Below are positions 16,124 through 61,957 of a stretch of DNA of 64,000 nucleotides, piece after piece. A program made the position numbers and the translations under genes. The DNA is taken from the IMG/VR virus record IMGVR_UViG_3300035182_002586, positions 434,001 to 498,000 of that record, one strand, 5' to 3'. Below the pieces are notes generated by a model. The model worked only from the letters and a program-made list of their open reading frames with translations, had not been told where the DNA came from and ran no database searches. How positions within the stretch are numbered: position 1 is the first letter of the stretch; each line of letters begins with the position of its first letter.

Positions 16124-16479
16124 TCGCCGTTGACCAGACCACGTTCGGCCATCCCGGCGGCAATTGCTTCTCCGCTTGTGTGGCGTCCCTGCTCCACCTG
16201 TCCGTCGAAGACGTGCCCTACTTCATGGGGCACGACGACTGGTACGAAGAATTCAGCAAGTGGCTCAAGCCACATGGGTTCGTCCCCCTGACATTCCGCC
16301 TCGACGGATGGACGCCCCCGGAAGGCGTCCTGTGCATCCTTGGGGGCAAGTCCCCTCGCGGGAGCCACGCCTGTGTGGGTCGAGGGAAGAAGATCGTCCA
16401 CGACCCACACCCAAGCCGTGACGGCCTAACCGCGATCGAGGACATCACCTTCTTGATCCCCTACGAGCCCGTCCGCTAG
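16120..16479 (+). CDS. putative papain-fold (C39-like) peptidase domain protein
   Basis: QTT..GNCFSACVASLL, SHACV, HDPHP catalytic-like Cys/His/Asp. Confidence 0.45.
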   Translation: MIAVDQTTFGHPGGNCFSACVASLLHLSVEDVPYFMGHDDWYEEFSKWLKPHGFVPLTFRLDGWTPPEGVLCILGGKSPRGSHACVGRGKKIVHDPHPSRDGLTAIEDITFLIPYEPVR

Positions 16480-17054
16480 CTCTCACGGGGCTTCCGTGCA
16501 CCACCCGTGCGCCCGATGAGCCTTGCCTCCTCAGGCGTCCATACATGGGCCGTCCCCCGTGCGTGGCAGATCTTGCCCGCTGCCGCCCCCGTCTCGGAGG
16601 TGAACTTTGAGGCCGTCCCCTTCGCTTGCGCAGCTCGTCCGCCCTGACCCGCCCGCTCGCGTCGTTGCTCGGGCGTCAGGATCGAGAACCCGCTCGGCTT
16701 TGAGAGACCCACCCGGAACACTGCGAGAGGGGTGGCCCCTCGAAGAGCCGCGCACGGAGCGCAGTACCCCTCTTGCGAGATTGGGGCAGTGAAGGTGCGG
16801 CACGCCGCGCAGAGACGGTGGCCCGCAACGTCCACGAGGTAGCACTCGAAGCACCAGCCTGGGGTTACGACCTTGTGGCCACACAACTTGAAGCACTTGC
16901 CGCACGGGGCCGGGACCCGTGGCACCGCCTTGTGCCCGTGTGCCGTGTGACACCCGCGGCAGCACGCCCACGGCTTGCCGAAACGGCTCGGTGTGTACGC
17001 CTCTCTCGGGAGGTCGCGACGGCACCGGGGGCAATGTTGCGTATCAGCAGGCAC
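16476..17054 (-). CDS. multi-CxxC zinc-finger protein fused to KGG-type stress repeat
   Basis: six or more CxxC pairs then GFSILTPEQRRERAGQGGRAAQAKGTASKFTSE..AAAG..HARGTAHVWTPEEAR..GRTGG. Confidence 0.65.
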   Translation of the reverse strand: MPADTQHCPRCRRDLPREAYTPSRFGKPWACCRGCHTAHGHKAVPRVPAPCGKCFKLCGHKVVTPGWCFECYLVDVAGHRLCAACRTFTAPISQEGYCAPCAALRGATPLAVFRVGLSKPSGFSILTPEQRRERAGQGGRAAQAKGTASKFTSETGAAAGKICHARGTAHVWTPEEARLIGRTGGARKPRES

Positions 17055-17259
17055 GGGGCGCCGGTACACCGAGTGGGGGACGCCGAGAGGCGCGGCTCAC
17101 CTCCCAGTAATAGCGGCAGCCCTTCTCCGCGTTCAAGCGGTTGAGACGCTCGGTTTGTTGGTCGGCCTCATCGACCGACCCGACGACCAACTTCACAACC
17201 ACTCGGTCCCCGTCGGCCCGAAGAACCACGAAGCAGGGCTCAATTGTAGCGGGGTTCAT
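17044..17259 (-). CDS. hypothetical protein
   Basis: 71 aa; class B element upstream. Confidence 0.55.
   Translation of the reverse strand: MNPATIEPCFVVLRADGDRVVVKLVVGSVDEADQQTERLNRLNAEKGCRYYWEVSRASRRPPLGVPAPRAC
17064..17070 (-). promoter_or_regulatory. class B element GGTGTAC
   Basis: 9 nt to GTG 17054. Confidence 0.55.
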
Positions 17260-17272
17260 CTCAGCGCTGCCG

Positions 17273-17292
17273 GTACACCGCGTCTGGTGTAC
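17273..17292. promoter_or_regulatory. divergent class B pair TACACC-N6-GGTGTA
   Basis: 13 nt to ATG 17259 (-), 9 nt to ATG 17302 (+). Confidence 0.7.
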
Positions 17293-17301
17293 CCCAGAGG
17301 T

Positions 17302-17883
17302 ATGCCTCCGAAGAAGATCACGCTCCCCGAAGACGCGACGCTCCAGGCCGCACGAGATGCCGTCGAGTTCGGAAGAACTGGCCGCGAGGGGGTGATCTGC
17401 CCCTGCTGCGATCAGCAGGCTACGATGTACCGGCGCAAGGTCACCGCAGCCATGGCGAAGGTACTCCTGGCGCTCTACTGCCGGGATCTGACGGCACCCG
17501 GCGCTTGGGTTCGCATCCCGTCTCTTCTCAGCACGATGAAGGGGGCCGACGGCCAGGGAGGCGATTGGGGGAAACTCGCCCACTGGGACCTCGTAGAGAA
17601 GGGCACTGGGAAGCGTGAGGACGGCAGTAGCCGCACGGGCTACGCCCGAATCACGTCCTTCGGTCGGAAGTTCGCAGCACGGGGTGCCCGGATCCTACAG
17701 ATCGCACACGTCTTCAACGACAAGTGCTTCGGTTACGACGGACCCCTCGTCACCATCGACGACTGCCTCGGGAAAGAAAACGCCTTCCTGTACAACGAGA
17801 TCCTCTCGGGCGTCAGCATCCCAGAAGAGGACACCCGGGAGGAGCCGACCGAAGAGGCGAAGTTCTTCGAGTCCCTCATCTGA
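17302..17883 (+). CDS. conserved-looking phage protein (CPCC motif, probable winged helix)
   Basis: G..CPCC.Q...YRRK, GDWGKLAHW, YARITSFG. Confidence 0.75.
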   Translation: MPPKKITLPEDATLQAARDAVEFGRTGREGVICPCCDQQATMYRRKVTAAMAKVLLALYCRDLTAPGAWVRIPSLLSTMKGADGQGGDWGKLAHWDLVEKGTGKREDGSSRTGYARITSFGRKFAARGARILQIAHVFNDKCFGYDGPLVTIDDCLGKENAFLYNEILSGVSIPEEDTREEPTEEAKFFESLI

Positions 17884-18251
17884 TGAGCCGCGAGAACCCC
17901 CAAGTCCAAGTGCTCCTGGCCCCCATCGACCAGGACTCCGCTGGAAGCTGCTTGCTTCTCGCACGCAACATCCGAGCGTGGGGGATCTCGTGTCTCGTGG
18001 ACGGGCGCGCCGTCCGCCTGAAAAAGAAGATCGAGTGGGCCGTGAAGATGGACGCGTTCTTCGTCCTCATCGTCGGGCCGGACGACATCGCAGCCGGAGT
18101 GGTGCAGATCAAGGACCTCGACGAGAGCACCCAACAGACGGTCCCCCTCGCGAACACCCCCCGCTACCTCGCCGGCCAGCTCCTCGCCCCCGACGAGATG
18201 CGGCGGATCAAGCTGGACCGGGAAGTCGAAGACTTCAACAAGCAAGGCTGA
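17883..18251 (+). CDS. stand-alone class II aaRS (HisRS-like) anticodon-binding domain
   Basis: VLLAPID..A...L.LA..IR..GI.C.VD....RLKKKIEWA.K...FVLIVG.D....G.V.IKDL....Q..VPL. Confidence 0.75.
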   Translation: MSRENPQVQVLLAPIDQDSAGSCLLLARNIRAWGISCLVDGRAVRLKKKIEWAVKMDAFFVLIVGPDDIAAGVVQIKDLDESTQQTVPLANTPRYLAGQLLAPDEMRRIKLDREVEDFNKQG

Positions 18252-18284
18252 GATCCGGTGTTACGCTTGGCCGAGGCCAGGAGG

Positions 18285-18842
18285 ATGAACATGGATCGAA
18301 GGACCGCCATCAGCACGCTTACCGGGATCGCTGCACTCACCGTCGCCGCACCCGCGCTCGCAGCCGCGCCGGGCACCCCTACCACGACTCCGGGGTGCCC
18401 GAAGGATCACGAGTACATCGCCCTCGTCATCAGAACCCCCACGGCGCTCAAGACCAAGGAGGGCGTCGCCGAAGCCCTCCGGCAGAGGGTGCGGACCGAG
18501 CTGGCGAACCTTCCCGGGTGGGGCTACTGCGGGCTGATCCGGATCCGCGCCGAGGGCATCGACGAGAGCCTGACGGAAAAGGACCGTCTGGCCCACCTCG
18601 CGATGGTCGAGGAGACGGTGAAGAACGATCCCGATTACGTGTTCGTCGCGAACTACGCCGCTAACGAGTGGCGGGTACGGGACGCAACGGTCGTGCTGGA
18701 AGAGGAAGCGGCCGACTTCACGTTCAAGCACCAGGAGTACGAGTGGCTCGTCGACGAGACGCTCAAGAACTGGACGCACGGGTTCGCGCCCTCCCACATC
18801 GAGTTCATCGCCTACGTGTCCGCTCCCAAGAAGAAGGCGTGA
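18285..18842 (+). CDS. putative Tat-exported protein
   Basis: MDRRTAISTLTGIAALTVAAPALAAA twin-Arg, h-region, AxA; AGGAGG SD. Confidence 0.65.
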   Translation: MNMDRRTAISTLTGIAALTVAAPALAAAPGTPTTTPGCPKDHEYIALVIRTPTALKTKEGVAEALRQRVRTELANLPGWGYCGLIRIRAEGIDESLTEKDRLAHLAMVEETVKNDPDYVFVANYAANEWRVRDATVVLEEEAADFTFKHQEYEWLVDETLKNWTHGFAPSHIEFIAYVSAPKKKA

Positions 18843-18855
18843 CGCTTCGGGCCCC

Positions 18856-18862
18856 GGTGTAC
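18856..18862 (+). promoter_or_regulatory. class B element GGTGTAC
   Basis: 11 nt to ATG 18874. Confidence 0.55.
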
Positions 18863-18873
18863 GCGGACTGCCC

Positions 18874-19503
18874 ATGCAGTACGTGATCGAGACGCGAGAC
18901 GGGGAGAAGCCGTGGGAGCCCTTCACCGAGCCCACCCTCGGCTTCGCGATTCTCGGCAAGGGGACGCAGCAGCTCAACCAGGTCCAGCGGATCTACCGGA
19001 CCGAGAAAGAGGCTGAGGATCGCGTGGGGGAGCTAGAGCGGCGCCTCCCCCGAAAGTCCCCACTCGCGTACCGGGCCGTGGGCCTCCAACGACCGAACCT
19101 CGAAACCCCTGAGTTCGAGTGGGCCCGTGATGGCGCCCCCACGGCCGAGACTATCGCCGCCAAGAAGGCCGAGCTGGACGAGCGCCTCATCGCCCTGGAA
19201 GCGGAGAAGGCCAAGCTCACCGAGGAGTCCAACCAGCTTCTTGGGTACACCCTGGTCACATGTACCCGGAACTGTCATGGCCCCGGGTGCGGCAAGGCCA
19301 CCCCCATCCGCGAGCTGGTCTACATCCAGACGCACTGGTACGTCGAGCCTCACGGCTGCACGGGTGGGGACTATTGGAGAGCAGGGGAGGGCAACTTCGA
19401 CTGCCCTCACTGCGGGCACCGCAACCGGCTCTATGACCGCAAGCCCATCGAAGCGCTCAGGCACCTGTTCCGGGGCGTCACCAACGAACACCGGGACAGG
19501 TAG
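18874..19503 (+). CDS. hypothetical protein, coiled coil plus Cys cluster
   Basis: 209 aa ORF; CTRNC..GCG, CPHCG. Confidence 0.75.
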   Translation: MQYVIETRDGEKPWEPFTEPTLGFAILGKGTQQLNQVQRIYRTEKEAEDRVGELERRLPRKSPLAYRAVGLQRPNLETPEFEWARDGAPTAETIAAKKAELDERLIALEAEKAKLTEESNQLLGYTLVTCTRNCHGPGCGKATPIRELVYIQTHWYVEPHGCTGGDYWRAGEGNFDCPHCGHRNRLYDRKPIEALRHLFRGVTNEHRDR

Positions 19504-19971
19504 CTACCCGAGGGTGACCATCGAGGCGTAGGCAGCAGGCTTCGGAGGGTCGACCTTCATCGTGGTCAGGTGTCCCAACGAGTGGGCGAACGTGATGATC
19601 CACGCCTTCAAGTAGACCCCCGTGACACGGTGGACCGTGCGTCCGGGCCCCGCCAGTGCCTTGGCTGCCAGGACGACCTTCTCCTCAGGGGTCTTGGCCG
19701 GGACACGGACGATGCGGTCCGGTACGGGCAGAGAGCCCTCGACGGTGCATGTGACGACCAGGTAGGTGTCTGCCGGGGCGATGGAGCGGAACATCCCGTG
19801 ATAGGGCTGCGGAACGTCGTCGAGGCTGGCGATTGGGGGTGCCATCGTCTCCACGGCTCCGACCGCTCCGTCCCGCATCAGGTCGAGAACCTCGGCCGGG
19901 TCTGTCACGCCCTCCTCCGCCAGCACAGCGAGGATCTTCCTGCCCACTCGTTCCTTCTTCGCAGTGTCCAT
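19504..19971 (-). CDS. hypothetical protein
   Basis: TATGCT 7 nt upstream of ATG. Confidence 0.65.
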   Translation of the reverse strand: MDTAKKERVGRKILAVLAEEGVTDPAEVLDLMRDGAVGAVETMAPPIASLDDVPQPYHGMFRSIAPADTYLVVTCTVEGSLPVPDRIVRVPAKTPEEKVVLAAKALAGPGRTVHRVTGVYLKAWIITFAHSLGHLTTMKVDPPKPAAYASMVTLG

Positions 19972-24428: not shown

Positions 24429-26483
24429 CTACGAGGCGCCGTTGGTCGGCGTCGCCGGGGTCTTCTTGCCGACCTCGGCGCGGATCTGGTTCCGCAGTGC
24501 CTCGGTCTCCGGGCTCCGCTTGGGGGCCGCCGAGAGCACCGTGTCAGCCGCGAACTTGTCCGACATCACCATCGTCAGCAGAGTCTCCAGGATGCCCGAG
24601 CCCTGGCCGTTCTGACTCCCGACGACGATGCGAGGCACCACATCGACCTTCGACTCACGGATGGCGTTCGAGAAGCCCTCCATGACCTGCTGAGTGAGCT
24701 GGAACTTCGGACCACCGTAGGCAGCCACCTGCTCCTCGATCGCCACGGCCTGCGCGATACCGACGCGTGCAGCCCGGTCCGCCTCGGCTTCGGCGAGGTA
24801 GCGAACCTTGTCCGCTTCGGCGCGCGCCATCGCGCGAACCTTGTCGGCCTCCGCTTCTGCCATCGCACGGATCTGCGAGGCCGTCTGAATCGACCGCTGG
24901 TACTGCGCCTTGCCCTCGTTCTCCTGCGTCCGGATGGAGATCTCGGACTCGGTGAGCTGCTGCTGAGCCCTCGAAACCGCCTCGGCCTCGCGAAGCGCGC
25001 GTTCCTTCTCCGCAGCCTTCTGCTGGCGGTCGTAGGTGCCGATCTGCTCTTCGGCGATCTGACGCGAGCGGAGCTGCGTCAGGATGGTGCCGATCTGCTT
25101 GTCGTTGTCGTCCGGCGACGGCGTGCCGATGAGGACCTCTTCCAGCTCCAGGTTGTACTGCGCGAACTTGGCCTTCATCCCCACGGCCGACTCGCTCTGG
25201 ATCTCGCTGCGCTCCTGAATGAGCTGGATCAGCGTCCGGGTCTGCGCCACGTTCTTGAAGTACGCGCTGACCATCGGGTCGAGCGTCTGGTTCACGAGGC
25301 GCTGGATGTCACCGAAGCGCTGGACAACGAGCGGCGCCTTGCGGTAGTCGATGTGCACGACAACCGAGAGCGGCAGCCAGGGCTCGAACGCGTCCTTGGT
25401 GATGAGCCCGACCTCGCAGAGGTTCTCGTCGAACTTGTGAGCAGACACTTCCGTCTCTTCCCACTTGAGGATGAAGTTCGTGGTCGGGACCGTGACGATC
25501 TTCCCGGCGTACGTGTTGAACGCGTACTTGCCCGGCATCAGAGCCTCGTCCCACACGCCGCGCTGACCCTTGCGAACCAGCTCCCCGTGCGAGTAGTCCG
25601 ACCCCGAGAGGTCCGCGCCCGCCTCGCCCGTGTAGGAGACTACGACGCCGACCGTGCCGACCTCGATGACCGTCTTGGGGATCAGCTCGACCGTCGCGAA
25701 GAGCCGGTTGATGTAGTAGGTCCCGTCGACGAGCACCTGCATCTGGCGCCCACGACGGCCGCCCGCAGCCAGGAAGAGCAGAGGGTCCTGGAAGTTGTTG
25801 TGGTAGGAGGGCTTCTCCGGATCCTCTCCGACGAGCGGGGCGATCACGTCCCCGTGGGAGAGACCCGGGCCGTCGTGCACGGTCACGACCCCGATCTTGT
25901 CGTCCGTGCCCCGGATCACGATCGGCTTGAAGCCATCACGCTCCCGGATGATGGTCGACATCTTCTCCAGCTCGTGCTTGTCATTCGACAGGCTCAGCCC
26001 ATACACCTCGTCCTCGGTGAAGACCGCGAAGAGGGCCGGGTTGATGGCGTACGTCCCCTCACGGAGGATCGTCATCTGCGGGCCCCGCTGACCTCCCCCT
26101 GCGAGGAACGCCCGAGCATCCCCGTAATTGGCGCACCCCACCACGCATCCTGCGAGGGTCTGCGTCGCTTCGAGCTGCTTGCCGTCGCGCGCGAAGACGT
26201 AGCCGATCTTGCCCTGCGGCACGGTGACCAGCGGCGCCTTGTGGACGCGGTACTGAATCGGCGTGAGCCAGTGGATGCCGCCACGGAGCATGTCGGGCTG
26301 GTAGCCCGCCTCGCCCCCGAGGGCCATGAAGCCGCTCTTGACGGAGCCCTTGCGTGACCACCGTTTCTCAACGACGGCCACGCGATTGTTCGGGATGACT
26401 CGTACCCCTGAGAGGAGCACAAAGAAGACGAGGAGGCCCAAGGCCACCTCGATGAGGAATGCCGGTTCGGGCAGGTGGTGCAT
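24429..26483 (-). CDS. SPFH/band 7 flotillin-family membrane protein
   Basis: N-terminal TM, LITKDAFE..LP.SVVVHID SPFH core, AEA/EAE coiled coil. Confidence 0.85.
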   Translation of the reverse strand: MHHLPEPAFLIEVALGLLVFFVLLSGVRVIPNNRVAVVEKRWSRKGSVKSGFMALGGEAGYQPDMLRGGIHWLTPIQYRVHKAPLVTVPQGKIGYVFARDGKQLEATQTLAGCVVGCANYGDARAFLAGGGQRGPQMTILREGTYAINPALFAVFTEDEVYGLSLSNDKHELEKMSTIIRERDGFKPIVIRGTDDKIGVVTVHDGPGLSHGDVIAPLVGEDPEKPSYHNNFQDPLLFLAAGGRRGRQMQVLVDGTYYINRLFATVELIPKTVIEVGTVGVVVSYTGEAGADLSGSDYSHGELVRKGQRGVWDEALMPGKYAFNTYAGKIVTVPTTNFILKWEETEVSAHKFDENLCEVGLITKDAFEPWLPLSVVVHIDYRKAPLVVQRFGDIQRLVNQTLDPMVSAYFKNVAQTRTLIQLIQERSEIQSESAVGMKAKFAQYNLELEEVLIGTPSPDDNDKQIGTILTQLRSRQIAEEQIGTYDRQQKAAEKERALREAEAVSRAQQQLTESEISIRTQENEGKAQYQRSIQTASQIRAMAEAEADKVRAMARAEADKVRYLAEAEADRAARVGIAQAVAIEEQVAAYGGPKFQLTQQVMEGFSNAIRESKVDVVPRIVVGSQNGQGSGILETLLTMVMSDKFAADTVLSAAPKRSPETEALRNQIRAEVGKKTPATPTNGAS

Positions 26484-26493
26484 GGGCGCGGTG

Positions 26494-26500
26494 GTACACC
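26494..26500 (-). promoter_or_regulatory. class B element GGTGTAC
   Basis: 10 nt to ATG 26483. Confidence 0.6.
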
Positions 26501-26521
26501 GAGTCCACCCCGAACGAGGCC

Positions 26522-27631
26522 CTACTTTCCCTTGCCGAGGAACTCCTTGATCGAGGGGAGGATCGCATCGCGGTCTGCGATCTGGCTCAGGGTCACCCGA
26601 TCGTCGTCGGGGAATGCCGTTCGGAGGTCCTTGTAGAACTGCCCCGACCCGTACGGAGAATCGACCTGTCCGTACGAGAACACGTTCACGACGGGCAGGA
26701 GGCGATCGCGCAGGACCTTGATGCAATCCTCCGTGTCCTCAGTCGACCAGTTGTCCCCGTCGGAGAAGTGGAAAGGGTAGATGTTCCACGAAGATGAGGG
26801 GTAGTCCTTGTCGATGATCTTCATGCACAGGTCCAGAGCCGACGAGATCCTCGTCCCTCCAGACTCGCGCGTGTGGAAGAACGTGTGCCGGTCGACCTCG
26901 CGCGCCTCTGCGTCGTGGGTGATGAACCGGGTCTCGATGCCCTTGTACTGACGTCGGAGCCAGAGGTCGATCCAGAAGGACTCCAGGCGGACGATCTCTT
27001 TCTGGTCGTCGCCCATCGAGCCCGACACGTCCATCATGTAGATGACGACGGCCTGCGCCTGCGGCTTGAGGGTGATGTCCGGCGCGCGGTAGCGCCAGTC
27101 GTCTCGCACGGGCATGAGCACGGGCTGGTCGGGGTTGTAGTCCCCCGACGAGATGGCGCGCTTGAGCGTCTCCTTGTAGCTGCGCTTCATGTGGCGCAGC
27201 GACCCGGGCCCCACTCTGGAGATCCCCGTGTACTTGTTCGAGTCCTGGATGATGTTCTCTTTGCCCTTGTTCTCGATCTTCGGGAGTTGGAGTTCGTCTC
27301 CGAGCATGTCGGCGAGTTCATCCATGGAGATGTCCGCCTCGATCCCGTGCTTGTCCGTGTCCTTGCCGGCCTTCTTGCCCTTGCCCTTCTGGTCCGGGTC
27401 GCCGCCCACGGGATCGCCTACGTCCCCATCCCCCTGTCCTGCGCCCCCCGCCTGCTTGTCACCGTAGACGAAGCGCGGCATGTCGATCTGAGGGATCGGC
27501 ACGGACACGACATCCTTGCCGACGCGGCCGAGAAGCTCCCCCGAAGAGATGTACTTCGAGAGGTTCCCGCGCACCTTCTTGCGGATGATGTCCTTGAACC
27601 TCGAATGGTCTGCGCCGATGCGATTCGACAT
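26522..27631 (-). CDS. yeaH: YeaH/YhbH family (DUF444) protein
   Basis: DHSRFKDII, MMDVSGSM, SGGT.ISSA, NIYPFHFSDGDNW. Confidence 0.9.
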   Translation of the reverse strand: MSNRIGADHSRFKDIIRKKVRGNLSKYISSGELLGRVGKDVVSVPIPQIDMPRFVYGDKQAGGAGQGDGDVGDPVGGDPDQKGKGKKAGKDTDKHGIEADISMDELADMLGDELQLPKIENKGKENIIQDSNKYTGISRVGPGSLRHMKRSYKETLKRAISSGDYNPDQPVLMPVRDDWRYRAPDITLKPQAQAVVIYMMDVSGSMGDDQKEIVRLESFWIDLWLRRQYKGIETRFITHDAEAREVDRHTFFHTRESGGTRISSALDLCMKIIDKDYPSSSWNIYPFHFSDGDNWSTEDTEDCIKVLRDRLLPVVNVFSYGQVDSPYGSGQFYKDLRTAFPDDDRVTLSQIADRDAILPSIKEFLGKGK

Positions 27632-29145: not shown

Positions 29146-29553
29146 ATGGCCCTCCGCACGGTCGGAGATCCCCGGTCCGAAGTCGTGGTCCTTGGACCCC
29201 AAGGACGCATCGTGGGCCATATTTTCGTCGACCTCAGCCTCTACGGCATCGACGACCCCGTTCTCGATGACCAGGACCTACGACCCTTCATCATCAACTG
29301 CCTCGACGGGATCATCCTCGTCGCCCACCGGCAGGTCGACCGCAAGTCGCGGTTCCTCGAACTCGGGCCCATGGATCTAGAGCACGAGCCGGTTCTGCGC
29401 GAAGCCTTCGAGATGCCCGCCGCGCACATGTACACGAGCGACTACATCAGGCACACGCAAGCGGTGAACAACACCGAAGTCTTGCGGATCAAGGGGTTGG
29501 CCGGAGCCCATTTCGGACGACGGGCCCGTGCATCCAGTGGTCTCCCGAACTGA
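29146..29553 (+). CDS. hypothetical protein
   Basis: 135 aa ORF; 3' overlap with ligase gene. Confidence 0.65.
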   Translation: MALRTVGDPRSEVVVLGPQGRIVGHIFVDLSLYGIDDPVLDDQDLRPFIINCLDGIILVAHRQVDRKSRFLELGPMDLEHEPVLREAFEMPAAHMYTSDYIRHTQAVNNTEVLRIKGLAGAHFGRRARASSGLPN

Positions 29554-30151
29554 CGTGATCCTTTCGGACCCACTTTCCAACCGCGCGTGAGAACTCGCCC
29601 TCTCCGAAGCCGCAGGCCCACCGAACGACGACGCCCTCCCTCTCCCCACCGCAGGCTGACGGCTGCACCGCGAAGCGCTCAACGATGGCCTGGAGGTCCT
29701 GCGCTCGGGGTGCTGGAGCGGGCTGTGCGAGAACCGGGACTGTCGGTAGCCCGAGGGACGCCGCACACTCCTCGACCTCGGCCCACGAGTGCCAACGGAG
29801 TGTCTGCGCGTTGCGTACTCCGAAGACGGTCAGGTAGGCGGGCAGCGCCGTGTAGGCGATCGAGTGCTTCGCCCAGAGCCACTCCCCGAACACCTGGAGG
29901 TTGTCGGGGATGCTGTCGCGCAACGACGCCCACAGAGCCTTGAAGGCGTCGAAGCTCGGGTGCGACGGCGGCTTCCCGTGGCTGCGCGCAAAACACCCCT
30001 CCCGTTCGAGGCTCACGTTGCTGCCGTCGAGCTTCTCGGTGAAGACGAGGGGCACCTTGAGGAGCGAACCGACGCTCTTCATGCGCTTGTCGTCGCTCTC
30101 GCCTCCAGGGGAGAACGGGAAGTGGGAGGTGCGGGGGTACTTGAGGCTCAT
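29489..30151 (-). CDS. ATP-dependent RNA ligase, Rnl2-like family
   Basis: KYPRT.H, motif I TEKLDGSN, FGE, REGVVVR, KWVR. Confidence 0.85.
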   Translation of the reverse strand: MSLKYPRTSHFPFSPGGESDDKRMKSVGSLLKVPLVFTEKLDGSNVSLEREGCFARSHGKPPSHPSFDAFKALWASLRDSIPDNLQVFGEWLWAKHSIAYTALPAYLTVFGVRNAQTLRWHSWAEVEECAASLGLPTVPVLAQPAPAPRAQDLQAIVERFAVQPSACGGEREGVVVRWACGFGEGEFSRAVGKWVRKDHVSSGDHWMHGPVVRNGLRPTP

Positions 30152-30154: not shown

Positions 30155-31027
30155 TCAACTCCGGGGCTTCCGTAGTCGGACCCACTCCTCCGTCGTTCCC
30201 TCGAACCCCGACGGCTTCGGCCCGCACCCTACCGGCACGTCCTCGAACTCCCCAGGCCCCGTCTGAACCAGATACGTCTCAGGTTCGGGCACAGGCTCGA
30301 AGGCCGCAGCGGGGGGCAGGCAAAGACAGTCTCGCGAACGTCCACAGGTGTCGCAGTAGTACCCGCCGTCCGTGATGACACAGAGAGGGGCGGGGGGCGG
30401 GTTCTTCCGGCGCATCTTCGGGACGGGCTTGCCACAGAACGGGCAGAACCGACCCTCAGGATCCGTGTCGTAGTGACCATCCGGCGCGAGGTCCGTGTGG
30501 TAGCTCGTGCGCCACCACGCCTTACCTGTGATGGAGTCTGGGTCGACCCTGACCGTAAAGACGATCGCCGGGTGCACCCGCGCCTCTTCGCAGCATTCGA
30601 GACGCGGAATCGCGTTCTTCTGGAATCGCTGGTACTCGTCGAAGAGGTCGCTAAGCTCCCACCGCTCCTGTTCGGACAGTGCCTCCCCGTCCTCGTGACG
30701 CGCCGCGCCTTCCTTTGCACTGAGAACGCGGAACCGTTCGATACGGGTCAAGTCCATGCGAAGGGAGGTACACCATCGGAGTGCGTCGCGAAGCTCCCCC
30801 GTCGGAGCCAGCTCCCGGTTCCCATCCTCGGGGGTAATGAGCACCAGCGCGGACCCGACGACGTTCGTGTTCGCCGTGTTGCACACGTGGAACCGGCGCT
30901 CTGCCCGATCGACCACGGTGGTGCCCGCATTCGGCCGCGCGAAGAGCTTCGTCTCTGCCGACCGGAGCATCACTGCCCATGCGTCCATCGAGGGCGAGAA
31001 GCGGCTGTCGAGGATCTCGTAGACCAT
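30155..31027 (-). CDS. Cys-rich hypothetical protein
   Basis: FCPFCG, YCDTCG..DCLC. Confidence 0.7.
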   Translation of the reverse strand: MVYEILDSRFSPSMDAWAVMLRSAETKLFARPNAGTTVVDRAERRFHVCNTANTNVVGSALVLITPEDGNRELAPTGELRDALRWCTSLRMDLTRIERFRVLSAKEGAARHEDGEALSEQERWELSDLFDEYQRFQKNAIPRLECCEEARVHPAIVFTVRVDPDSITGKAWWRTSYHTDLAPDGHYDTDPEGRFCPFCGKPVPKMRRKNPPPAPLCVITDGGYYCDTCGRSRDCLCLPPAAAFEPVPEPETYLVQTGPGEFEDVPVGCGPKPSGFEGTTEEWVRLRKPRS

Positions 31028-31503
31028 CAGAACACCGCCAGTGCCCCAGCCACGAAGCCCTCGGAGTAGACGACGAGGGCTTCGCGCTTCTTTTTGGTGA
31101 ACGAGTCCCACTCGTTCACGGCGATCCCGAGCTTCCCGGTGGGGCCACCGTGGACCTTGATGTCCCAGATGTGATCGTCCCGGTCCAGAGACCAGAGGAC
31201 TTCCTTGAGGTTCGCGGCCAGAGCTTCGAGAACCTTGACCTCGCTGCACGTCACCAGGCGAACGTAGCGGCCGCTGTACTCCTCCTGCCAGACGGGGCAC
31301 TCGGGCCGCCCGTCGATGCCGCCCCAGCAGTAGTCGCTGAACGGGTCTCCGAGTCCCTTCCGAGAGCAGTCGATGTCCTCTGCGCTCGGCTTGTAGTCCC
31401 CACAGCCGGGGCAGACCTCGCCGCTCCCGACCCTAGGGGCACTCTCGCCTTCGCCTTCCGCCTTGGTGGCGTCCTCCCCGGGGAGCACTTCGTCGTCTTC
31501 CAT
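31027..31503 (-). CDS. hypothetical protein (CPGCG)
   Basis: class B element 9 nt upstream; TGATG coupling. Confidence 0.65.
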   Translation of the reverse strand: MEDDEVLPGEDATKAEGEGESAPRVGSGEVCPGCGDYKPSAEDIDCSRKGLGDPFSDYCWGGIDGRPECPVWQEEYSGRYVRLVTCSEVKVLEALAANLKEVLWSLDRDDHIWDIKVHGGPTGKLGIAVNEWDSFTKKKREALVVYSEGFVAGALAVF

Positions 31504-39501: not shown

Positions 39502-39842
39502 AGAAGTGGACACCGTGGACGCGTGACCTCGCGTTCGACTTCATCGCGAGAGCCATCCCCGTGATGAAAGACGCCGGGTACGCGTGCGCCCTCGCGGGAA
39601 GTCTCCTGATCAAGAACGAGAGTCAGAAGGATCTGGATCTGGATCTCGTTCTCTTCCCCTACGACAACACCAAGTCACGCGTGGACGATGCTCTCGAAGC
39701 CCTCCGGTCCCTCGGGATGGCCTGCGTGTTCGACGTGGCGTTCGTACACGAGAAGTGGGCGAACCAGGGGAGCACGGATCGAAAGCACGTCGAGGTGTGG
39801 GAGTACGACGGCCACCGCATCGATGTCTTCTGGCTGGAGTGA
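39498..39842 (+). CDS. minimal nucleotidyltransferase-fold protein
   Basis: LAGSLL...S.KDLDLDL and RIDVF, Pol-beta-like G-S/DxD/D. Confidence 0.6.
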   Translation: MKKWTPWTRDLAFDFIARAIPVMKDAGYACALAGSLLIKNESQKDLDLDLVLFPYDNTKSRVDDALEALRSLGMACVFDVAFVHEKWANQGSTDRKHVEVWEYDGHRIDVFWLE

Positions 39843-39844
39843 AC

Positions 39845-40105
39845 ATGTCGAGTTACGGCGAACGAGTCCGCACTCTGCTCGAACACGGGACGGTCATCTG
39901 CGAGTGCCACACGTGCATGGGGTCGGACGGCACCGCTGTCCTCCGCATCCTGTGGGACGATGGACACATCAGCGAGATGCCTTACTACAAGGTCGTCCCG
40001 TCGGACAAACCCGGACGCCCGCTCTTCAACGGGCAGCCCGCAACGGACGGCCGAACGCCGCGAGTACCGCAGCATCCCGTTCAAGCACCTGCACGGGAGG
40101 TATGA
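39845..40105 (+). CDS. hypothetical protein
   Basis: 86 aa ORF. Confidence 0.6.
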   Translation: MSSYGERVRTLLEHGTVICECHTCMGSDGTAVLRILWDDGHISEMPYYKVVPSDKPGRPLFNGQPATDGRTPRVPQHPVQAPAREV

Positions 40106-40170
40106 CGCGACGTACCTCCCGGACCCCCTTCCTCGACACACGAGCCCTCTCACCCTTCCCTGAGGCCACG

Positions 40171-40689
40171 ATGATGCCCCGCAAGAACATGACGATCCGT
40201 GGGAACTACGCTCTCTTCTGGGGCCAGTGGCCGTCCAACTGGGAGGCGTCCCCCTTCACCATCGACGGCAAGAGCTACACGTGCGTCGAGCAGTGGATGA
40301 TGGCGGAGAAGGCTCGCCTCTTCGGCGACACCGTGGCGGAGGCCCGCATCATGGCGACTGCGGACCCCGCGGATCAGAAGCGCTACGGCCGTGGCGTGAA
40401 GGGGTACGTCGAGGACCAGTGGGCGGCTGTCCGCTACCAGATCGTGCTTCGAGGCGTCGTCGAGAAGTACAGGCAGAACGAGCACTTGCGGGAGAAGCTC
40501 CTCGCGACGGGAGACCTCCAGTTCGTCGAGGCGTCCCCCGAAGACCGGGTGTGGGGCATCGGCATGCGCGCGACGGATCCCGGTGCCGACAACCCCCGCC
40601 AGTGGCGGGGCCAGAACCTCCTCGGCAAGGCCACGACGGAAGCGCGGGAGACCATCCGCGCGGAGATGGCCCTCGCAGGCATCCCGTGA
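40171..40689 (+). CDS. ybiA: NADAR family (YbiA-like) N-glycosidase / ADP-ribosylhydrolase
   Basis: FW...SNW..SPF, EQWMMAEKARLFGD, EASP.DRVWGIG, G.NLLGK. Confidence 0.9.
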   Translation: MMPRKNMTIRGNYALFWGQWPSNWEASPFTIDGKSYTCVEQWMMAEKARLFGDTVAEARIMATADPADQKRYGRGVKGYVEDQWAAVRYQIVLRGVVEKYRQNEHLREKLLATGDLQFVEASPEDRVWGIGMRATDPGADNPRQWRGQNLLGKATTEARETIRAEMALAGIP

Positions 40690-57308: not shown

Positions 57309-57458
57309 ATGCCCGACAGGTCCCTGATCCGCGCGCTGCTCCTGGTCGCGTACCACCTCACCCGCTGCTTGCTGGTTGCGGTGGCCCTGCTGCCGCTCGT
57401 CGGCTTCATCTGGTTCCTCGGGCTGTTCTTCGAGTGGGCGCCACAGGAAGGGGCGTAG
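57309..57458 (+). CDS. small membrane protein
   Basis: hydrophobic 49 aa. Confidence 0.55.
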   Translation: MPDRSLIRALLLVAYHLTRCLLVAVALLPLVGFIWFLGLFFEWAPQEGA

Positions 57459-57460
57459 CG

Positions 57461-57763
57461 ATGTCCACGAACACGTTCCCCAACTGGCTGGCCCTCATGG
57501 AGACCTGGTTGTGGGTCCACCACAAGGGTCAGCCCGCCGTCATCTTCTCCTACCCCATCGCCGGTCCTGATCCTGGCTTCGCCGATCGAGTCAAGCGACT
57601 GCAAGAACGCTTCGGCGCGGACTTCCCGAGTCTCGTTGGCGCCGAGTTCGCTGTCCTCGTGTGCCCCACCTTCGAGGAAGCGGGCCGCATCCTGCGCGAG
57701 ACCCCCGAGAACGACCCCTACACCCTCGTGTGGGACGGGAACAAGATCACGGGCCACCACTGA
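57461..57763 (+). CDS. hypothetical protein
   Basis: 100 aa. Confidence 0.7.
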   Translation: MSTNTFPNWLALMETWLWVHHKGQPAVIFSYPIAGPDPGFADRVKRLQERFGADFPSLVGAEFAVLVCPTFEEAGRILRETPENDPYTLVWDGNKITGHH

Positions 57764-57768
57764 AACCG

Positions 57769-57797
57769 GATGGATCGGCCCGTACCTCGCGGTGTAA
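57769..57797 (+). promoter_or_regulatory. hybrid class A/B promoter GATGGATC-N14-GGTGTAA, leadered
   Basis: GAGGT SD before ATG 57832. Confidence 0.7.
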
Positions 57798-57831
57798 CTA
57801 AGGCAGGTCGCGCATCCACACGAGGTTACCC

Positions 57832-58497
57832 ATGAACGTGTCTGTTCTTCGCCCCGAGGTGTCGAAGGTCGCCGTGAAGGTCGCGCTGCAAGGCGTCGCA
57901 GCGGAGGGCTTCAAGTACGACGCCCATCTGGTCGATCTCGTGCGCCGGAACACGACCATGCGCGGCCGGCAGGTGCAGTTCGGGCTCGACGCTCTCCGCC
58001 GTACGACCCGTTGGGCGCAAGTCGCCACGGGGATGAGCACGATCTTCGAGGAGGGGGTCAGCTCTCAGGACGCGCGTGACCGCTTCGAGGCCATCCGCGA
58101 ACGCCCGAACTACTACTTCATGGTGACGAACTACCTCGGGCGCCAGGCGACCAAGAAGGGAACCACCGCCCCGAACGAGAAGCTCCTGACGGCCGAGCAG
58201 GCGTGCACGATCCTCGGCCTCAAGTGGGGCATGTGGAAGAAGCGCATGTGGCGGTTCCACAAGGGGGAGCCCAACACCTACAAGAAGGACGACCGCCGCC
58301 GCTTCACCGGTTGGATGCCCACGCCAGTGGAAGGGGCCTACCTCTCCAAGAAGGCGCTGTTCACGGCCGCCGACATCGCCAGGGTTCAGCGCCTCCATGG
58401 AGGTAAGGATCCGACTGTCGAGGTGAAGGTGACGCCGGAGAACGATGTCGAACCCGCCCCCAAGGCTTGGCCGCGCGCGGCGCGAGGAGGCCGGTGA
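57832..58497 (+). CDS. putative DNA-binding protein with excisionase/MerR-like HTH
   Basis: LLTAEQACTILGL...FTAADIAR. Confidence 0.6.
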   Translation: MNVSVLRPEVSKVAVKVALQGVAAEGFKYDAHLVDLVRRNTTMRGRQVQFGLDALRRTTRWAQVATGMSTIFEEGVSSQDARDRFEAIRERPNYYFMVTNYLGRQATKKGTTAPNEKLLTAEQACTILGLKWGMWKKRMWRFHKGEPNTYKKDDRRRFTGWMPTPVEGAYLSKKALFTAADIARVQRLHGGKDPTVEVKVTPENDVEPAPKAWPRAARGGR

Positions 58498-59186
58498 TGA
58501 AAAGCCCCCGTCCGCGTCTCCACCTGAAGGACGACGACTTCCGCGCCCTTCGCCACATGGCCATCGACACGGACCGCACGGTCGGTGACCTGGTGGCCGA
58601 AGCGATCCAGCTTCTCTTCAAGCACCACAACTACGTGTGGGGGCAGACGAAACCTGAGAAAACGACCACACCCGCGAGCTGCGGCTCGACCCCGAAGAAG
58701 GGAGTTCGACCGATCGGCCGCCCGCGTCGGGCCCTCAACACCCCTCCGGAAGGGATCGAAGTCGAGCGCGTCCGACTCGGGTTGTCGAAACGCGAACACG
58801 CGAAGAAGATCGGGATCCCGATCGCAACGTACCTGGCCGCAGTGCAACGCGAAAGTGTAACGCCTGTGGTCACCGAGAAGCCCAACAAGGCTCCGGTCAC
58901 CGAGAAGCCCAACAAGGCTCCGGTCACCGGAATCTCCCTGGAGACGTTCGCGAAGCGACGTGGCGTGCCCGTGTCGCAGATCGTCAAAGAGGGCCCGGAC
59001 GCGCCGCTCAAGATTCGGTCGAAGACGACGGGACGGTGCCTCACGACGAAGGGTGAGTGGGCAGACCTTCATCGCAGGACCATCGTGCTGACGACGGCGC
59101 AAGAAGCCGAGGAGTTCGTGAAGAGCGTCTTCGGGGAGTTGAGTGGTACGTCGGACGTGGAGATCGTTCCGGTCTACGCCAACTGA
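58494..59186 (+). CDS. multi-domain regulator: RHH + AT-hook-like + XRE-like HTH
   Basis: LHLKDDDFRALRHMAIDTDRTVGDLVAEAI; IGRPRR; RVRLGLSKREHAKKIGI. Confidence 0.65.
   Translation: MMKSPRPRLHLKDDDFRALRHMAIDTDRTVGDLVAEAIQLLFKHHNYVWGQTKPEKTTTPASCGSTPKKGVRPIGRPRRALNTPPEGIEVERVRLGLSKREHAKKIGIPIATYLAAVQRESVTPVVTEKPNKAPVTEKPNKAPVTGISLETFAKRRGVPVSQIVKEGPDAPLKIRSKTTGRCLTTKGEWADLHRRTIVLTTAQEAEEFVKSVFGELSGTSDVEIVPVYAN
58869..58929 (+). repeat. 27-bp tandem repeat x2.3 (VTEKPNKAP)
   Basis: GTCACCGAGAAGCCCAACAAGGCTCCG repeated exactly. Confidence 0.9.
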
Positions 59187-59189
59187 TCG

Positions 59190-59217
59190 GATGGATCGCC
59201 ACCGACTCACGCTGTAG
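59190..59217 (+). promoter_or_regulatory. class A promoter (N16)
   Basis: 7 nt to ATG 59225. Confidence 0.8.
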
Positions 59218-59224
59218 TAGGAAC

Positions 59225-59563
59225 ATGACCCCCGAAACCGCCCGCGCTGCCGTCGCCCTCTTCGTCAAGGCCGCCGAGACCCGCCTCTGCCACGAACCCG
59301 ACGAGGAGACCCGCGAGATCGAAGGCAAGAGCATGATGCGCATCAGCGCAATGCTCGTCCCGTACAACAAGGCGAAGGTCGACCGTCTCTACGTGTGGCT
59401 GACCGACGAAACCATCACGGTCCAGGTCGCCGGCCAGACCCCTTCCCCCGAAGGCGCCGAGTACGGCTTCACCTCGGTCTCGGCCAAGGCCGAGACCAAC
59501 GCCCAGTTCGACGCCGCCGGGCTCTGCCAGTTCTTCCTCGCCCTCGCCAAGGGGATGCGCTGA
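59225..59563 (+). CDS. hypothetical protein
   Basis: behind class A motif. Confidence 0.75.
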   Translation: MTPETARAAVALFVKAAETRLCHEPDEETREIEGKSMMRISAMLVPYNKAKVDRLYVWLTDETITVQVAGQTPSPEGAEYGFTSVSAKAETNAQFDAAGLCQFFLALAKGMR

Positions 59564-60691: not shown

Positions 60692-61525
60692 ATGAAACCG
60701 ACTTTGAACCTACCCTCGCTAGCGGCCGCTCTGCGCATTCACCCCACACACGCTGCTCACCTTGTGAGGGCGATGAGGGCGATGAGGGCGGGAACAAGTC
60801 AAGTGGCTGCCCTCGCCGACGAGATCGAGAGGGTGGCGCAACGCCGGAGTCCGCGGGAATCGATCAGCGTAACGCCTCCGCGACCAACAAGGGGACCCGA
60901 AGAACGGGAGTGGCGCCGACTGTACGCGCGTACGAGTGAGGCCCGAAGTAACAACCTTACCCGCAAGGCCGCCGCTGCCATGCGGTTTGACTACAACGAC
61001 GGCGACTCGCAATACGAAGCGTTCTGCAAGCGTTTCGGCTACGGTTCAACCGAAGAGGTGTTCCGCGCCGCTATTCGCCCGTGGGAGATCGGTTGGCGCG
61101 GTGTGGAAGTCGGAAATGTCCGGTTCGGCAAGCTGGAAAAACCACTGAGCCCGACGATGCCCCCGTCTCGTCGATCCAATACACCCGTCGACTTCTACCG
61201 GTTGCTGTACCTCACGAAGCCGGTAGGTGTCTCGTTCGACGACATGTACGGTCAGTCGATCTGTGGGTTCACGAGCCCGTGCCGTCGTTTCGCTATGGCC
61301 TTCTACTTCCACAAGTATGAGCTTGCAGCCTACCAATACGTCCGCAAAGACCTTGCTGTACGTACGCGTGAACTGCGCGGGCAGTTCATCATTCAGTCTG
61401 GTATCCCGGGCGTCGACAATGGTGTCAATACGAACGACGTCGACGCGAAACGATGGTTCCGAATGGTAGCTACCGCTATGCGCCGAAAGTGGAAGGTCTA
61501 CCCGGGTAACAACTTCGACATATAA
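60692..61525 (+). CDS. hypothetical protein (lower-GC island)
   Basis: 277 aa, weak codon bias. Confidence 0.7.
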   Translation: MKPTLNLPSLAAALRIHPTHAAHLVRAMRAMRAGTSQVAALADEIERVAQRRSPRESISVTPPRPTRGPEEREWRRLYARTSEARSNNLTRKAAAAMRFDYNDGDSQYEAFCKRFGYGSTEEVFRAAIRPWEIGWRGVEVGNVRFGKLEKPLSPTMPPSRRSNTPVDFYRLLYLTKPVGVSFDDMYGQSICGFTSPCRRFAMAFYFHKYELAAYQYVRKDLAVRTRELRGQFIIQSGIPGVDNGVNTNDVDAKRWFRMVATAMRRKWKVYPGNNFDI

Positions 61526-61624
61526 CCGCGAACTGATCGAGGCCCAAAGGAAGTGACGATGTGAACAGGTGCACCGCTGCACCGCAATCACTTCAAGTGC
61601 CTGTCGCCGAACGAGAGCTGAAAC

Positions 61625-61957
61625 ATGAGCCTAGCCCGCCACTGGATCATCCCCGGAGAAGTCACGCAAGAGGAGTTCGACTTCCTCGCGCACAGGCTAG
61701 GCGTCGTCTTCCCCGACCTCGGCGGGAAGTTCGAGCGCAACGCCCTCCAGAAGATGGTATGGGAAGTCGACCTCGACGAAGAGGACGCTCGGCGTGGTCA
61801 CAACCTGAGCCGGGAGGTGAAGGTCGACCTCACGGTCCGACTGCGCAACAGCGCGCTCGCGAACCTCGTCGCCTACCGGAACCGGACGCCCGGAGCCATC
61901 CCGAAGGCCGAGCACATCACCCTGTGGGATCGCATCCTCAAGGACGACGGACTCTAG
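61625..61957 (+). CDS. hypothetical protein with LWDRI tail
   Basis: ends AEHITLWDRILKDDGL. Confidence 0.75.
   Translation: MSLARHWIIPGEVTQEEFDFLAHRLGVVFPDLGGKFERNALQKMVWEVDLDEEDARRGHNLSREVKVDLTVRLRNSALANLVAYRNRTPGAIPKAEHITLWDRILKDDGL

What the first reader, a model, noticed from the sequence alone, without database searches (positions are those of the whole stretch)
17883..18251. Stand-alone HisRS-like anticodon-binding domain in a phage accessory operon
Seen: a 122 aa ORF matching the class IIa synthetase anticodon-binding fold by motif, translationally coupled (TGATG) to a probable winged-helix gene, with no catalytic domain nearby. Inference: a tRNA-binding factor that might shield anticodon loops from host anticodon nucleases, sequester a tRNA, or mimic the GCN2/HisZ-type use of aaRS domains for sensing.
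Basis: partly seen in the sequence, partly recalled or inferred. Interest (0 to 1): 0.6.

Follow-up and report, generated by a model that had tools for sequence, protein, structure and literature searches.

The report
Phage stand-alone HisRS-type anticodon-binding protein
A giant bacteriophage (at least 529 kb, with 53 tRNA genes) encodes a small protein that is only the tRNA-anticodon-recognising domain of histidyl-tRNA synthetase, belongs to a rare, conserved family found on phage-like contigs, and most likely binds tRNA-His without charging it.

Summary
Window 17883-18251 (+) is a real 122-aa gene. It scores 46 bits on Pfam HGTP_anticodon (E 5e-12), and its best full-length models are HisRS. 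An AlphaFold model (pLDDT 95.7) superposes on HisRS anticodon-binding domains at Z 17-18 and 1.3-1.4 Å. Its ATG shares one base with the upstream stop (TGATG). The whole 529-kb record has no class IIa catalytic domain and no second ABD.

The record is a tailed phage, with portal, terminase, baseplate and DNA polymerase genes, 53 tRNAs and a tmRNA.

The gene is not a pseudogene. The best 17 hits in a search of 1.8 billion proteins are short proteins that begin at the domain. They share an extra C-terminal helix and sit, wherever context could be read, in ORFan-dense phage-like contigs. dN/dS against a 71%-identical homologue is 0.23.

The residues that read the GUG anticodon in Thermus HisRS are kept (D/E68, K/R77, Q84).

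My best reading (about 0.45) is a non-catalytic binder of the tRNA-His anticodon arm. Shielding, sequestration or escort roles are untested.

Coupling to the upstream gene is not conserved, and its winged-helix assignment is weak. The family is absent from PHROGs, GenBank phages and BFVD phage proteins. I rate it a new variant of a known kind, of moderate interest.

The parts
17883..18251 (+). Gene for the 122-aa stand-alone HisRS-type anticodon-binding protein (P0001), stop codon included
   Evidence: Translation. Pfam PF03129 E 4.6e-12. hisS C-terminal match. dN/dS 0.23 and GC3 0.87. AF2 pLDDT 95.7. HisRS ABDs at Z 17-18.
17907..18170 (+). Core anticodon-binding domain, residues 9-96 (beta-alpha-beta-alpha-beta-alpha-beta-beta-alpha)
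   Evidence: Pfam envelope 9-96. Secondary structure of the model. Model residues 1-102 superpose on HisRS ABDs: 3net at rmsd 1.3 A over 97 residues, 1h4v at 1.4 A over 95.
18078..18134 (+). Segment homologous to the anticodon-reading region of HisRS: P66-D67-D68, K77, L79 and Q84, equivalent to Thermus HisRS E386-D387-E388, K397, K399 and Q404
   Evidence: Contacts taken from PMC4357726. Mapping rests on motif spacing in the HMMER alignment to E. coli HisRS and on the structural-alignment offset of 320 at the C-terminal end for 1h4v and 4rdx. Conservation in the family: D/E68 25/25, K/R77 24/25, Q84 17/25.
18189..18245 (+). Family-specific C-terminal helix (residues 103-121), with no counterpart in solved HisRS structures
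   Evidence: Helix 103-121 has mean pLDDT 94-96. PDB alignments end at model residue about 101-102. Top representative hits align through query residues 117-124. It is visible in alignment A1.
17881..17885 (+). TGATG stop/start overlap (1 nt shared) with the upstream gene
   Evidence: Read directly from the sequence and ORF coordinates. Not conserved in relative L007.
17302..17883 (+). Upstream 193-aa gene (context, not a demonstrated partner): phage protein family phrog_2693, function unknown
   Evidence: phrog_2693 E 2.6e-27. JGI gene call. Nearest Atlas clusters are all viral, with a weak PadR-like structural hint. Its homologue in L007 lies three genes away from the ABD gene.

Best explanation
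The gene encodes a non-catalytic, free-standing version of the HisRS anticodon-binding domain.

- **Origin (shown).** Within the set of HisRS-type ABDs compared, these stand-alone proteins group together on phage-like contigs, away from every full-length HisRS. That fits a single HisRS-like origin, but the separating branch is weak.
- **Added feature (shown).** The family has gained a C-terminal helix.
- **Molecular mechanism (inferred).** The protein keeps the HisRS residues that read G34-U35-G36. It therefore most likely binds the anticodon stem-loop of tRNA-His (GUG) during infection, either the host tRNA or the phage's own tRNA-His gene.
- **What binding would do (inferred).** With no catalytic core it cannot charge the tRNA. 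Binding would cover the anticodon loop or hold the tRNA.
- **Likeliest biological use (speculative).** It may protect or escort tRNA-His so that phage translation continues when anticodon loops are attacked or modified. Sequestration of host tRNA-His is the alternative outcome of the same activity.
For: - **Fold and family.** Pfam PF03129 at 46 bits. hisS scores above thrS and proS. The family profile hits HisRS ABDs in the PDB at E 9e-14 to 1e-12, ahead of ThrRS at 6e-10. The AF2 model has pLDDT 95.7. Foldseek ranks HisRS first. VIA-align gives Z 18.3 to 17.5 for 3net, 4rdx and 1h4v.
- **Anticodon-reading residues kept.** The Thermus complex uses E386-E388, K397, K399 and Q404. The equivalents are D/E68 in 25/25, K/R77 in 24/25 and Q84 in 17/25 family members. 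In 111 HisRS-type sequences the figures are 111/111, 111/111 and 97/111.
- **A real, selected, stand-alone family.** The 17 best hits among 1.84 billion proteins are 104-278 aa and begin at the domain. Two fragments carrying a HisRS catalytic tail appear at E 9e-11 and 5e-8, and complete HisRS only from E about 5e-7. dN/dS is 0.23. In the tree, 19 of 20 family members lie apart from all 20 long HisRS, and a starred clade of 13 holds P0001.
- **Phage context.** The five family members whose contigs were read lie in ORFan-dense, phage-like DNA. The nearest relative sits on short 4-kb contigs.
- **tRNA biology in this genome.** It carries 53 tRNAs, including a canonical tRNA-His(GUG) with encoded G-1, C73 and CCA, plus a tmRNA and an RNA ligase 11 kb away. 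This fits a phage that invests in tRNA supply and repair.
- **No split synthetase.** There is no HisRS or class IIa catalytic domain anywhere in the 529-kb record.
Against: - No binding was measured and no protein-RNA model could be made with these tools.
- The anticodon is only a weak identity element for bacterial HisRS, and the ABD adds little to catalysis (PMC4357726). An isolated ABD may therefore bind tRNA weakly.
- Most family members are mildly acidic (pI 5.0-5.4), which is unusual for a strong RNA binder.
- Q84 is replaced in about a third of members.
- No neighbour is conserved. The gene lies about 275 kb from the tRNA island. No RNA-seq run holds the locus.
- The ABD fold is also used for non-tRNA purposes in other proteins (my own knowledge: the Pol gamma accessory subunit and Brix-domain proteins).
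Confidence: 0.45

Rival explanations
1. Protein-level modulator. The free ABD, with its extra C-terminal helix, docks on host HisRS or another host or phage protein. It would change that partner's activity as a competitor, decoy or adaptor, rather than binding tRNA itself.
For: - Most members are acidic, pI about 5.
- The family has signature residues not typical of HisRS: D80 in 24/25 against 14/111, R42 in 21/25 against 27/111, and K49 in 19/25 where HisRS mostly has Q.
- The conserved extra helix has no HisRS counterpart.
- Many small acidic phage proteins are inhibitors (general knowledge).
Against: - No partner is conserved next to the gene.
- The anticodon-contact residues would not need to be kept at HisRS-like levels.
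- The host is unknown, and no complex was predicted or tested.
Confidence: 0.2
2. Translational regulator. The protein binds an anticodon-arm mimic in an mRNA. Precedents are the ThrRS operator in E. coli (my own knowledge) and yeast HisRS binding its own mRNA (PMC6542539).
For: - The precedents show that class IIa ABDs can read anticodon-like hairpins in mRNAs (title and abstract of PMC6542539).
- The anticodon-reading residues are kept.
Against: - A scan of the genome for 5-bp stems with a 7-nt YU-GUG-RN loop outside the tRNA island found 6 sites against 4.4 expected. This is no enrichment, and none lies next to the gene.
- The scan was crude.
Confidence: 0.1
3. Functionless remnant of a captured host hisS gene.
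For: Short HGTP_anticodon-only proteins in databases are often fragments of HisRS.
Against: - dN/dS is 0.23 with the same length at 71% identity.
- Family members start at the domain, not inside a catalytic domain.
- The family forms its own group apart from long HisRS and has its own added helix.
- No adjacent hisS debris: the upstream gene is an unrelated phage family.
Confidence: 0.05

Closest known systems
C-terminal anticodon-binding domain of bacterial histidyl-tRNA synthetase (e.g. PDB 3net, 4rdx/1h4v, 1kmm)
   Same: - Same fold: Z 17-18, rmsd 1.3-1.4 A over 95-97 residues for 3net and 1h4v.
- Same Pfam family.
- Same anticodon-reading motif positions.
   Different: - It is not attached to any catalytic or insertion domain, and none exists in the genome.
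- It has an extra C-terminal helix.
- Its family signature (D40, R42, K49, D80) differs from typical HisRS.
- Identity to HisRS ABDs is only 22-24%.
Human HisRS splice variant lacking the catalytic domain (HisRS deltaCD, PDB 2lw7)
   Same: It is a natural protein that keeps the HisRS anticodon-binding domain without the catalytic domain. The family profile hits it at E 1.4e-6.
   Different: - It arises by exon skipping and keeps an N-terminal WHEP domain (my own knowledge).
- It is eukaryotic and of independent origin.
- It has no phage link.
Free-standing aaRS-domain paralogues (YbaK/ProX, AlaX, HisZ, Trbp111) and the KTSC RNA-binding domain protein of some jumbo phages
   Same: The principle is the same: a synthetase module released from the enzyme and reused. 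[quoted passage not shown] Jumbo phages are known to carry a LysRS-associated KTSC-domain protein (PMC7824862).
   Different: - Those are different domains and folds (editing, catalytic-like, OB-fold, KTSC).
- The jumbo-phage survey has no mention of HisRS, and none of its anticodon or synthetase passages concerns a class IIa ABD.
- HisZ is the HisRS-like catalytic core, which is absent here.
GCN2 HisRS-like region
   Same: It is a HisRS-derived, non-charging module used outside aminoacylation.
   Different: GCN2 uses a whole HisRS-like domain within a kinase (abstract of PMC11363354). Here there is only the 100-residue ABD plus a helix, and no kinase.
Catovirus CTV1 146-aa 'threonyl-tRNA synthetase' (UniProt A0A1V0SBD4, BFVD)
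   Same: It is a short viral protein with the class IIa ABD fold (TM 0.72 by query, 0.61 by target, E 5e-6).
   Different: It comes from a giant virus of eukaryotes, is ThrRS-type and is only 16% identical. It may simply be a fragment.

Membership tests
Pfam HGTP_anticodon (PF03129), class IIa anticodon-binding domain | Sequence match above the curated gathering score over the full domain | tested here: met
   46.4 bits against a cut-off of 21, profile positions 1-91 of 94. Also found by six-frame search of the genome.
Pfam HGTP_anticodon (PF03129), class IIa anticodon-binding domain | Alpha/beta fold with a mixed sheet flanked by helices, superposable on solved ABDs | tested here: met
   AF2 pLDDT 95.7. 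Foldseek E 3e-9 and TM 0.73. VIA-align Z 18.3, rmsd 1.3 A over 97 residues.
Histidine--tRNA ligase (HisRS; TIGR00442 / PF13393) | Class II catalytic core with motifs 1-3 and the histidine-binding motifs | tested here: not met
   The TIGR00442 score is 44.3 against a cut-off of 286.75, and only positions 321-405 match. There is no PF13393 or PF00587 match in the whole record at E <= 1.
Histidine--tRNA ligase (HisRS; TIGR00442 / PF13393) | Anticodon (GUG) contact residues of the ABD | tested here: met
   D68, K77 and Q84 are equivalent to Thermus E388, K397 and Q404. They are conserved in the family. This is homology of positions, not a binding test.
HisZ (ATP-PRT regulatory subunit) | HisRS-like catalytic-core fold that pairs with HisG | tested here: not met
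   There is only a weak C-terminal match to NF008942, at 15.8 bits against a cut-off of 643. No catalytic-like domain is present.
GCN2-type HisRS-like sensor | HisRS-like domain fused to a protein kinase | tested here: not met
   The protein is 122 aa and single-domain.
tRNA-binding protein (functional class) | Measured, specific binding to tRNA | not testable with these tools
   No RNA-protein prediction or assay was available. The only support is indirect, from residue conservation.
Phage counter-defence against anticodon nucleases | Protection of a tRNA from a defined nuclease, or rescue of infection in a defence-carrying host | not testable with these tools
   There are no PADLOC hits for the gene or five neighbours. 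No experiment was possible.

The most novel reading that the evidence does not exclude
The family is a phage-encoded tRNA-His anticodon shield or escort. It would clamp G34-U35-G36 of tRNA-His and so keep it out of reach of host anticodon-loop nucleases or modifying enzymes. My own knowledge: colicin E5-type nucleases cut tRNA-His, Tyr, Asn and Asp at positions 34/35. That would be a counter-defence principle not yet described, namely protection by a borrowed synthetase recognition module rather than by tRNA replacement or repair.
Probability: 0.15. Interest if true: 0.75.

Novelty: new variant of a known kind. Interest (0 to 1): 0.5.

Why it matters
Free-standing synthetase modules are a known route to new functions. 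A conserved class IIa anticodon-binding domain on its own in phages was not found in any of the resources I could search:
- PHROGs
- GenBank phages by tblastn
- BFVD phage proteins
- IMG/VR by pattern scan
- the literature held here

If it binds tRNA-His, it adds a non-enzymatic, protein-based way for large phages to manage a specific tRNA, beside the known tRNA genes, synthetases and repair ligases. It would also give a compact natural module of about 100 residues that reads one anticodon.

The test is cheap: one small soluble protein and one tRNA.

Tried and rejected
- **Single-sequence AlphaFold.** It gave a useless model (pLDDT 48.7). It was replaced by a run on a 117-sequence alignment.
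- **GenBank phages and PHROGs.** tblastn of the protein found no match, megablast of 20 kb of the window found none, and PHROGs had no family for it.
- **Pattern scans.** The IMG/VR scan with the family found no relatives; two other alignments were too variable to scan with. The metagenome scan returned 80 loci, but almost all are full-length HisRS genes with ORFs of 410-590 aa and the match at residue about 320-490. That scan did not enlarge the stand-alone family.
- **Profile word search.** It was swamped by HisRS and added only two or three short members.
- **Split-synthetase idea.** Rejected: there is no HisRS or class IIa core anywhere in the record.
- **Thg1 or CCA-adding partner.** Neither is present.
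- **T4 Rnl1 family.** No match, but the control genomes also had none, so this is uninformative.
- **Obligate partnership with the upstream gene.** Rejected as a family feature. For that reason I did not send a complex prediction.
- **mRNA anticodon-mimic hairpins.** No enrichment.
- **Defence-system models (PADLOC).** No hits for the gene or five neighbours.
- **TAA recoding, suggested by a tRNA with anticodon UUA.** No evidence. TAA ends 23 of 516 high-GC3 ORFs, and reading it through does not lengthen coding. Table 11 was used throughout.
- **Model coordinates.** They were not available to scripts, so how the C-terminal helix packs could not be examined.

Full report
**1. The observation**

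Window 17883-18251 on the + strand translates to a 122-residue protein ending in TGA. It matches Pfam HGTP_anticodon (PF03129) over the whole domain: profile positions 1-91 of 94, E 4.6e-12, 46.4 bits against a cut-off of 21.

Among NCBIfam full-length models the best is hisS (TIGR00442). Only its last 85 positions match, at E 1.2e-11. thrS, HisZ and proS score progressively worse. phmmer against PDB sequences returns only HisRS chains as true matches; a stronger-scoring designed TIM barrel is a repeat artefact.

The upstream ORF ends with TGA at 17881-17883 and the ATG is at 17883-17885. The TGATG overlap is therefore real. The gene has the codon-position GC pattern of a coding region in a 64% GC genome, with GC3 0.87 and GC2 0.38.

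**2. The genome**

The window is bases 434001-498000 of a 528,957-bp IMG/VR record. That record was cut from a 620,031-bp metagenome contig. It is a tailed phage, with these PHROG matches:
- portal protein
- large terminase
- baseplate wedge
- DNA polymerase
- a RecD/Dda-type helicase

It also carries 53 tRNA genes and a tmRNA in an island at 123-177 kb. One of them is a canonical bacterial-type tRNA-His(GUG) with encoded G-1, C73 and CCA.

The region around the finding is almost entirely small ORFans. The record has a single HGTP_anticodon match. It has no match at E <= 1 to the HisRS catalytic domain (PF13393) or the class IIa core (PF00587), while all 14 control genomes matched. The protein is therefore truly stand-alone and is not half of a split synthetase. 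The caveat is that the 90.6 kb trimmed from the contig could not be searched.

**3. Fold**

A single-sequence AlphaFold run failed. With a 117-sequence alignment the model reached mean pLDDT 95.7 and pTM 0.85. Its order of elements is strand-helix-strand-helix-strand-helix-strand-strand-helix, followed by an extra C-terminal helix at residues 103-121.

Structure comparisons all point to HisRS:
- Foldseek ranks HisRS domains first: E. coli 1kmm and Thermus 4rdx at ranks 1 and 4, Nostoc 3net at rank 17, E about 1e-8, TM 0.73.
- VIA-align gives Z 18.3 for 3net (rmsd 1.3 A over 97 residues), 17.6 for 4rdx and 17.5 for 1h4v. GlyRS, ProRS and ThrRS domains follow closely at Z about 16-17.
- ESM-Atlas shape neighbours are again HisRS.
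- All solved matches stop at model residue about 101-102. The last helix therefore has no counterpart in solved HisRS structures.

**4. Relatives**

The word-based search found only one relative, 71% identical and also 122 aa. The exhaustive HMMER search of 1.84 billion representatives found 342 hits.

The best 17 hits (E 1.7e-25 to 2.2e-11) are 104-278 aa. In these the match begins at residue 2-25 and usually runs through the query's C-terminal helix. Two truncated sequences that carry the tail of the HisRS catalytic domain appear at E 9e-11 and 5e-8. Complete synthetases of 420-480 aa appear only from E about 5e-7. Weaker short hits with N-terminal extras are HisRS fragments of the same kind.

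In a maximum-likelihood tree of 139 domains, 19 of the 20 top stand-alone proteins lie on one side of a weakly supported split. All 20 long HisRS lie on the other side. A well-supported clade (SH-aLRT 96) of 13 rows contains the query.

Each family cluster is a singleton seen on one to a few contigs. Five family members sit on contigs long enough to judge: 370 kb, 63 kb, 43 kb (same sample as the window), 35 kb and 11 kb. These are ORFan-dense and carry phage-type genes: DNA ligase, dCTP deaminase, endonuclease VII, SSB, DHFR, DNA methyltransferases and a Tad2-like protein. The nearest relative lies on short 4-kb contigs.

Apart from the ABD gene itself, nothing is shared between these loci. 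In the nearest relative, the homologue of the upstream gene is three genes away.

dN/dS between the two closest genes is 0.23, with dS near 0.95. This is a selected gene family, not debris.

**5. What it probably binds**

In the Thermus HisRS-tRNA-His complex the contacts are as follows (PMC4357726):

| Anticodon base | HisRS contact |
|---|---|
| G34 | E386-D387-E388 |
| G36 | K397 side chain and K399 main chain |
| U35 | Q404 |

Two lines of evidence place P66-D67-D68, K77, L79 and Q84 of this protein at those positions. The first is the HMMER alignment of the family to E. coli HisRS, which shows the same spacing: G-x-x-E, then K nine residues on, then Q sixteen residues on. The second is the structural alignment, which has an offset of 320 at its C-terminal end for 1h4v and 4rdx.

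Conservation across 25 family members, compared with 111 HisRS-type sequences:

| Position | Family (25) | HisRS-type (111) |
|---|---|---|
| 68 (D/E) | 25 | 111 |
| 77 (K/R) | 24 | 111 |
| 84 (Q) | 17 | 97 |

The family also has its own signature: D40, R42, a basic L-K-K-K stretch with K49 where HisRS mostly has Q, and D80.

So the recognition surface for GUG has been kept. That is the main reason to expect binding to the tRNA-His anticodon arm. It is an inference from homology; no binding was or could be tested.

**6. Mechanism and rivals**

The best reading (about 0.45) is a non-catalytic binder of the tRNA-His anticodon loop that a large phage makes during infection. Binding would cover G34-G36 or hold the tRNA. 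Either could protect or escort tRNA-His, or could withdraw host tRNA-His.

The genome invests heavily in tRNA supply and carries RNA-repair genes. There is an RNA ligase at window 29489-30151 (-) and an RtcB fragment elsewhere. This fits pressure on tRNAs but is circumstantial.

Evidence against this reading:
- The anticodon is a weak identity element for bacterial HisRS.
- The family is mildly acidic.
- No conserved partner or RNA element is linked to the gene.

Rivals:
- A protein-level modulator, for example of host HisRS (0.2).
- A translational regulator that reads anticodon-like hairpins in mRNA (0.1). A crude genome scan found no enrichment, 6 sites against 4.4 expected.
- A functionless remnant (0.05), disfavoured by selection, family breadth and the added helix.

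**7. Comparison with what is known**

It is a member of the HGTP_anticodon domain family by sequence and by fold. It is not a HisRS, HisZ or GCN2-type protein, because the catalytic-core feature was tested and is absent.

The nearest analogue in architecture is the human HisRS splice variant without the catalytic domain (PDB 2lw7, hit at E 1.4e-6). That variant arose independently and keeps a WHEP domain (my own knowledge).

Free-standing synthetase domains are recognised as a class (PMC5388404). Jumbo phages are known to carry a KTSC-domain protein (PMC7824862). I found no description of a phage class IIa ABD in any of these:
- the literature held here
- PHROGs
- GenBank phages
- BFVD, where only giant-virus synthetases match
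- IMG/VR pattern scan

**8. Verdict**

The thing is a new variant of a known kind: a free-standing synthetase module, here a phage family with an added helix. Interest is moderate at 0.5. The biology is plausible and cheaply testable, but the function is not shown.

Noticed in passing
whole record G000 (window = G000 434001-498000): The source is a tailed phage of at least 529 kb, cut by IMG/VR as a 'provirus' from a 620,031-bp contig. That puts it among the largest phage genomes. Portal is at G000 57453-59399, large terminase at 61177-63204, baseplate wedge at 251835-255296 and DNA polymerase at 318160-321213, all on the - strand. The first 90.6 kb of the contig was not available to check whether it is host or phage.
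   Followed up: partly
G000 123254-176528 (outside the window): There is a tRNA island with 53 tRNAs covering nearly all amino acids, plus a tmRNA at 175160-517 with tag ending ALKAAA. A tRNA with anticodon UUA (would read TAA) lies at 123254-123328. TAA ends only 23 of 516 high-GC3 ORFs, and reading it through does not lengthen coding, so there is no sign of recoding.
   Followed up: partly
L009 12175-12348: A different phage contig from the same sample carries a family member (P0004). It has two tandem tRNAs with anticodon UUA about 1.8 kb downstream of its ABD gene. The recurrence of this odd tRNA in two ABD-carrying phages is unexplained.
   Followed up: no
window 29489-30151 (-): A 220-aa RNA ligase (Pfam PF09414, E 1e-29) lies 11 kb downstream of the finding. 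The adjacent 381-aa ORF at 30155-31300 (-) has no Pfam or PHROG match.
   Followed up: partly
G000 116020-116316 (+), locus L102: Only the C-terminal 70-90 residues of RtcB (tRNA ligase) match, in a short open frame. The 506-aa ORF just upstream has no RtcB signal. It could be a remnant, or a gene interrupted by an intron or intein.
   Followed up: partly
window 18258-18842 (+): The gene directly downstream of the ABD encodes a protein of about 183-194 aa. It has a twin-arginine-like signal peptide (RR followed by a hydrophobic stretch and an A-x-A site), which suggests a secreted or membrane-anchored phage protein. It has no family match.
   Followed up: no
window 24429-26726 (-), 26522-27631 (-), 39688-40689 (+): This accessory region also holds a 765-aa protein with a Band_7/SPFH domain, a DUF444 protein (E 2e-85; its phrog_10856 match is annotated 'sporulation protein') and a NADAR-domain protein (E 1e-46).
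   Followed up: no
window 16476-17069 (-) and 17302-17883 (+): A divergently oriented pair is conserved as a pair in the related contig L007 (56% and 70% identity). It consists of a Cys-rich 197-aa gene and the phrog_2693 gene. The pair is separate from the ABD gene there, so it may be its own module.
   Followed up: partly
window 16900-19600: Near-identical DNA occurs in public runs labelled sediment, microbial mat and groundwater metagenomes. No RNA run holds it.
   Followed up: partly
P0010 (278 aa), P0003 (185 aa): Two family members carry long C-terminal extensions with no Pfam match after the shared helix. This suggests the helix may be a linker or docking element for added modules.
   Followed up: no
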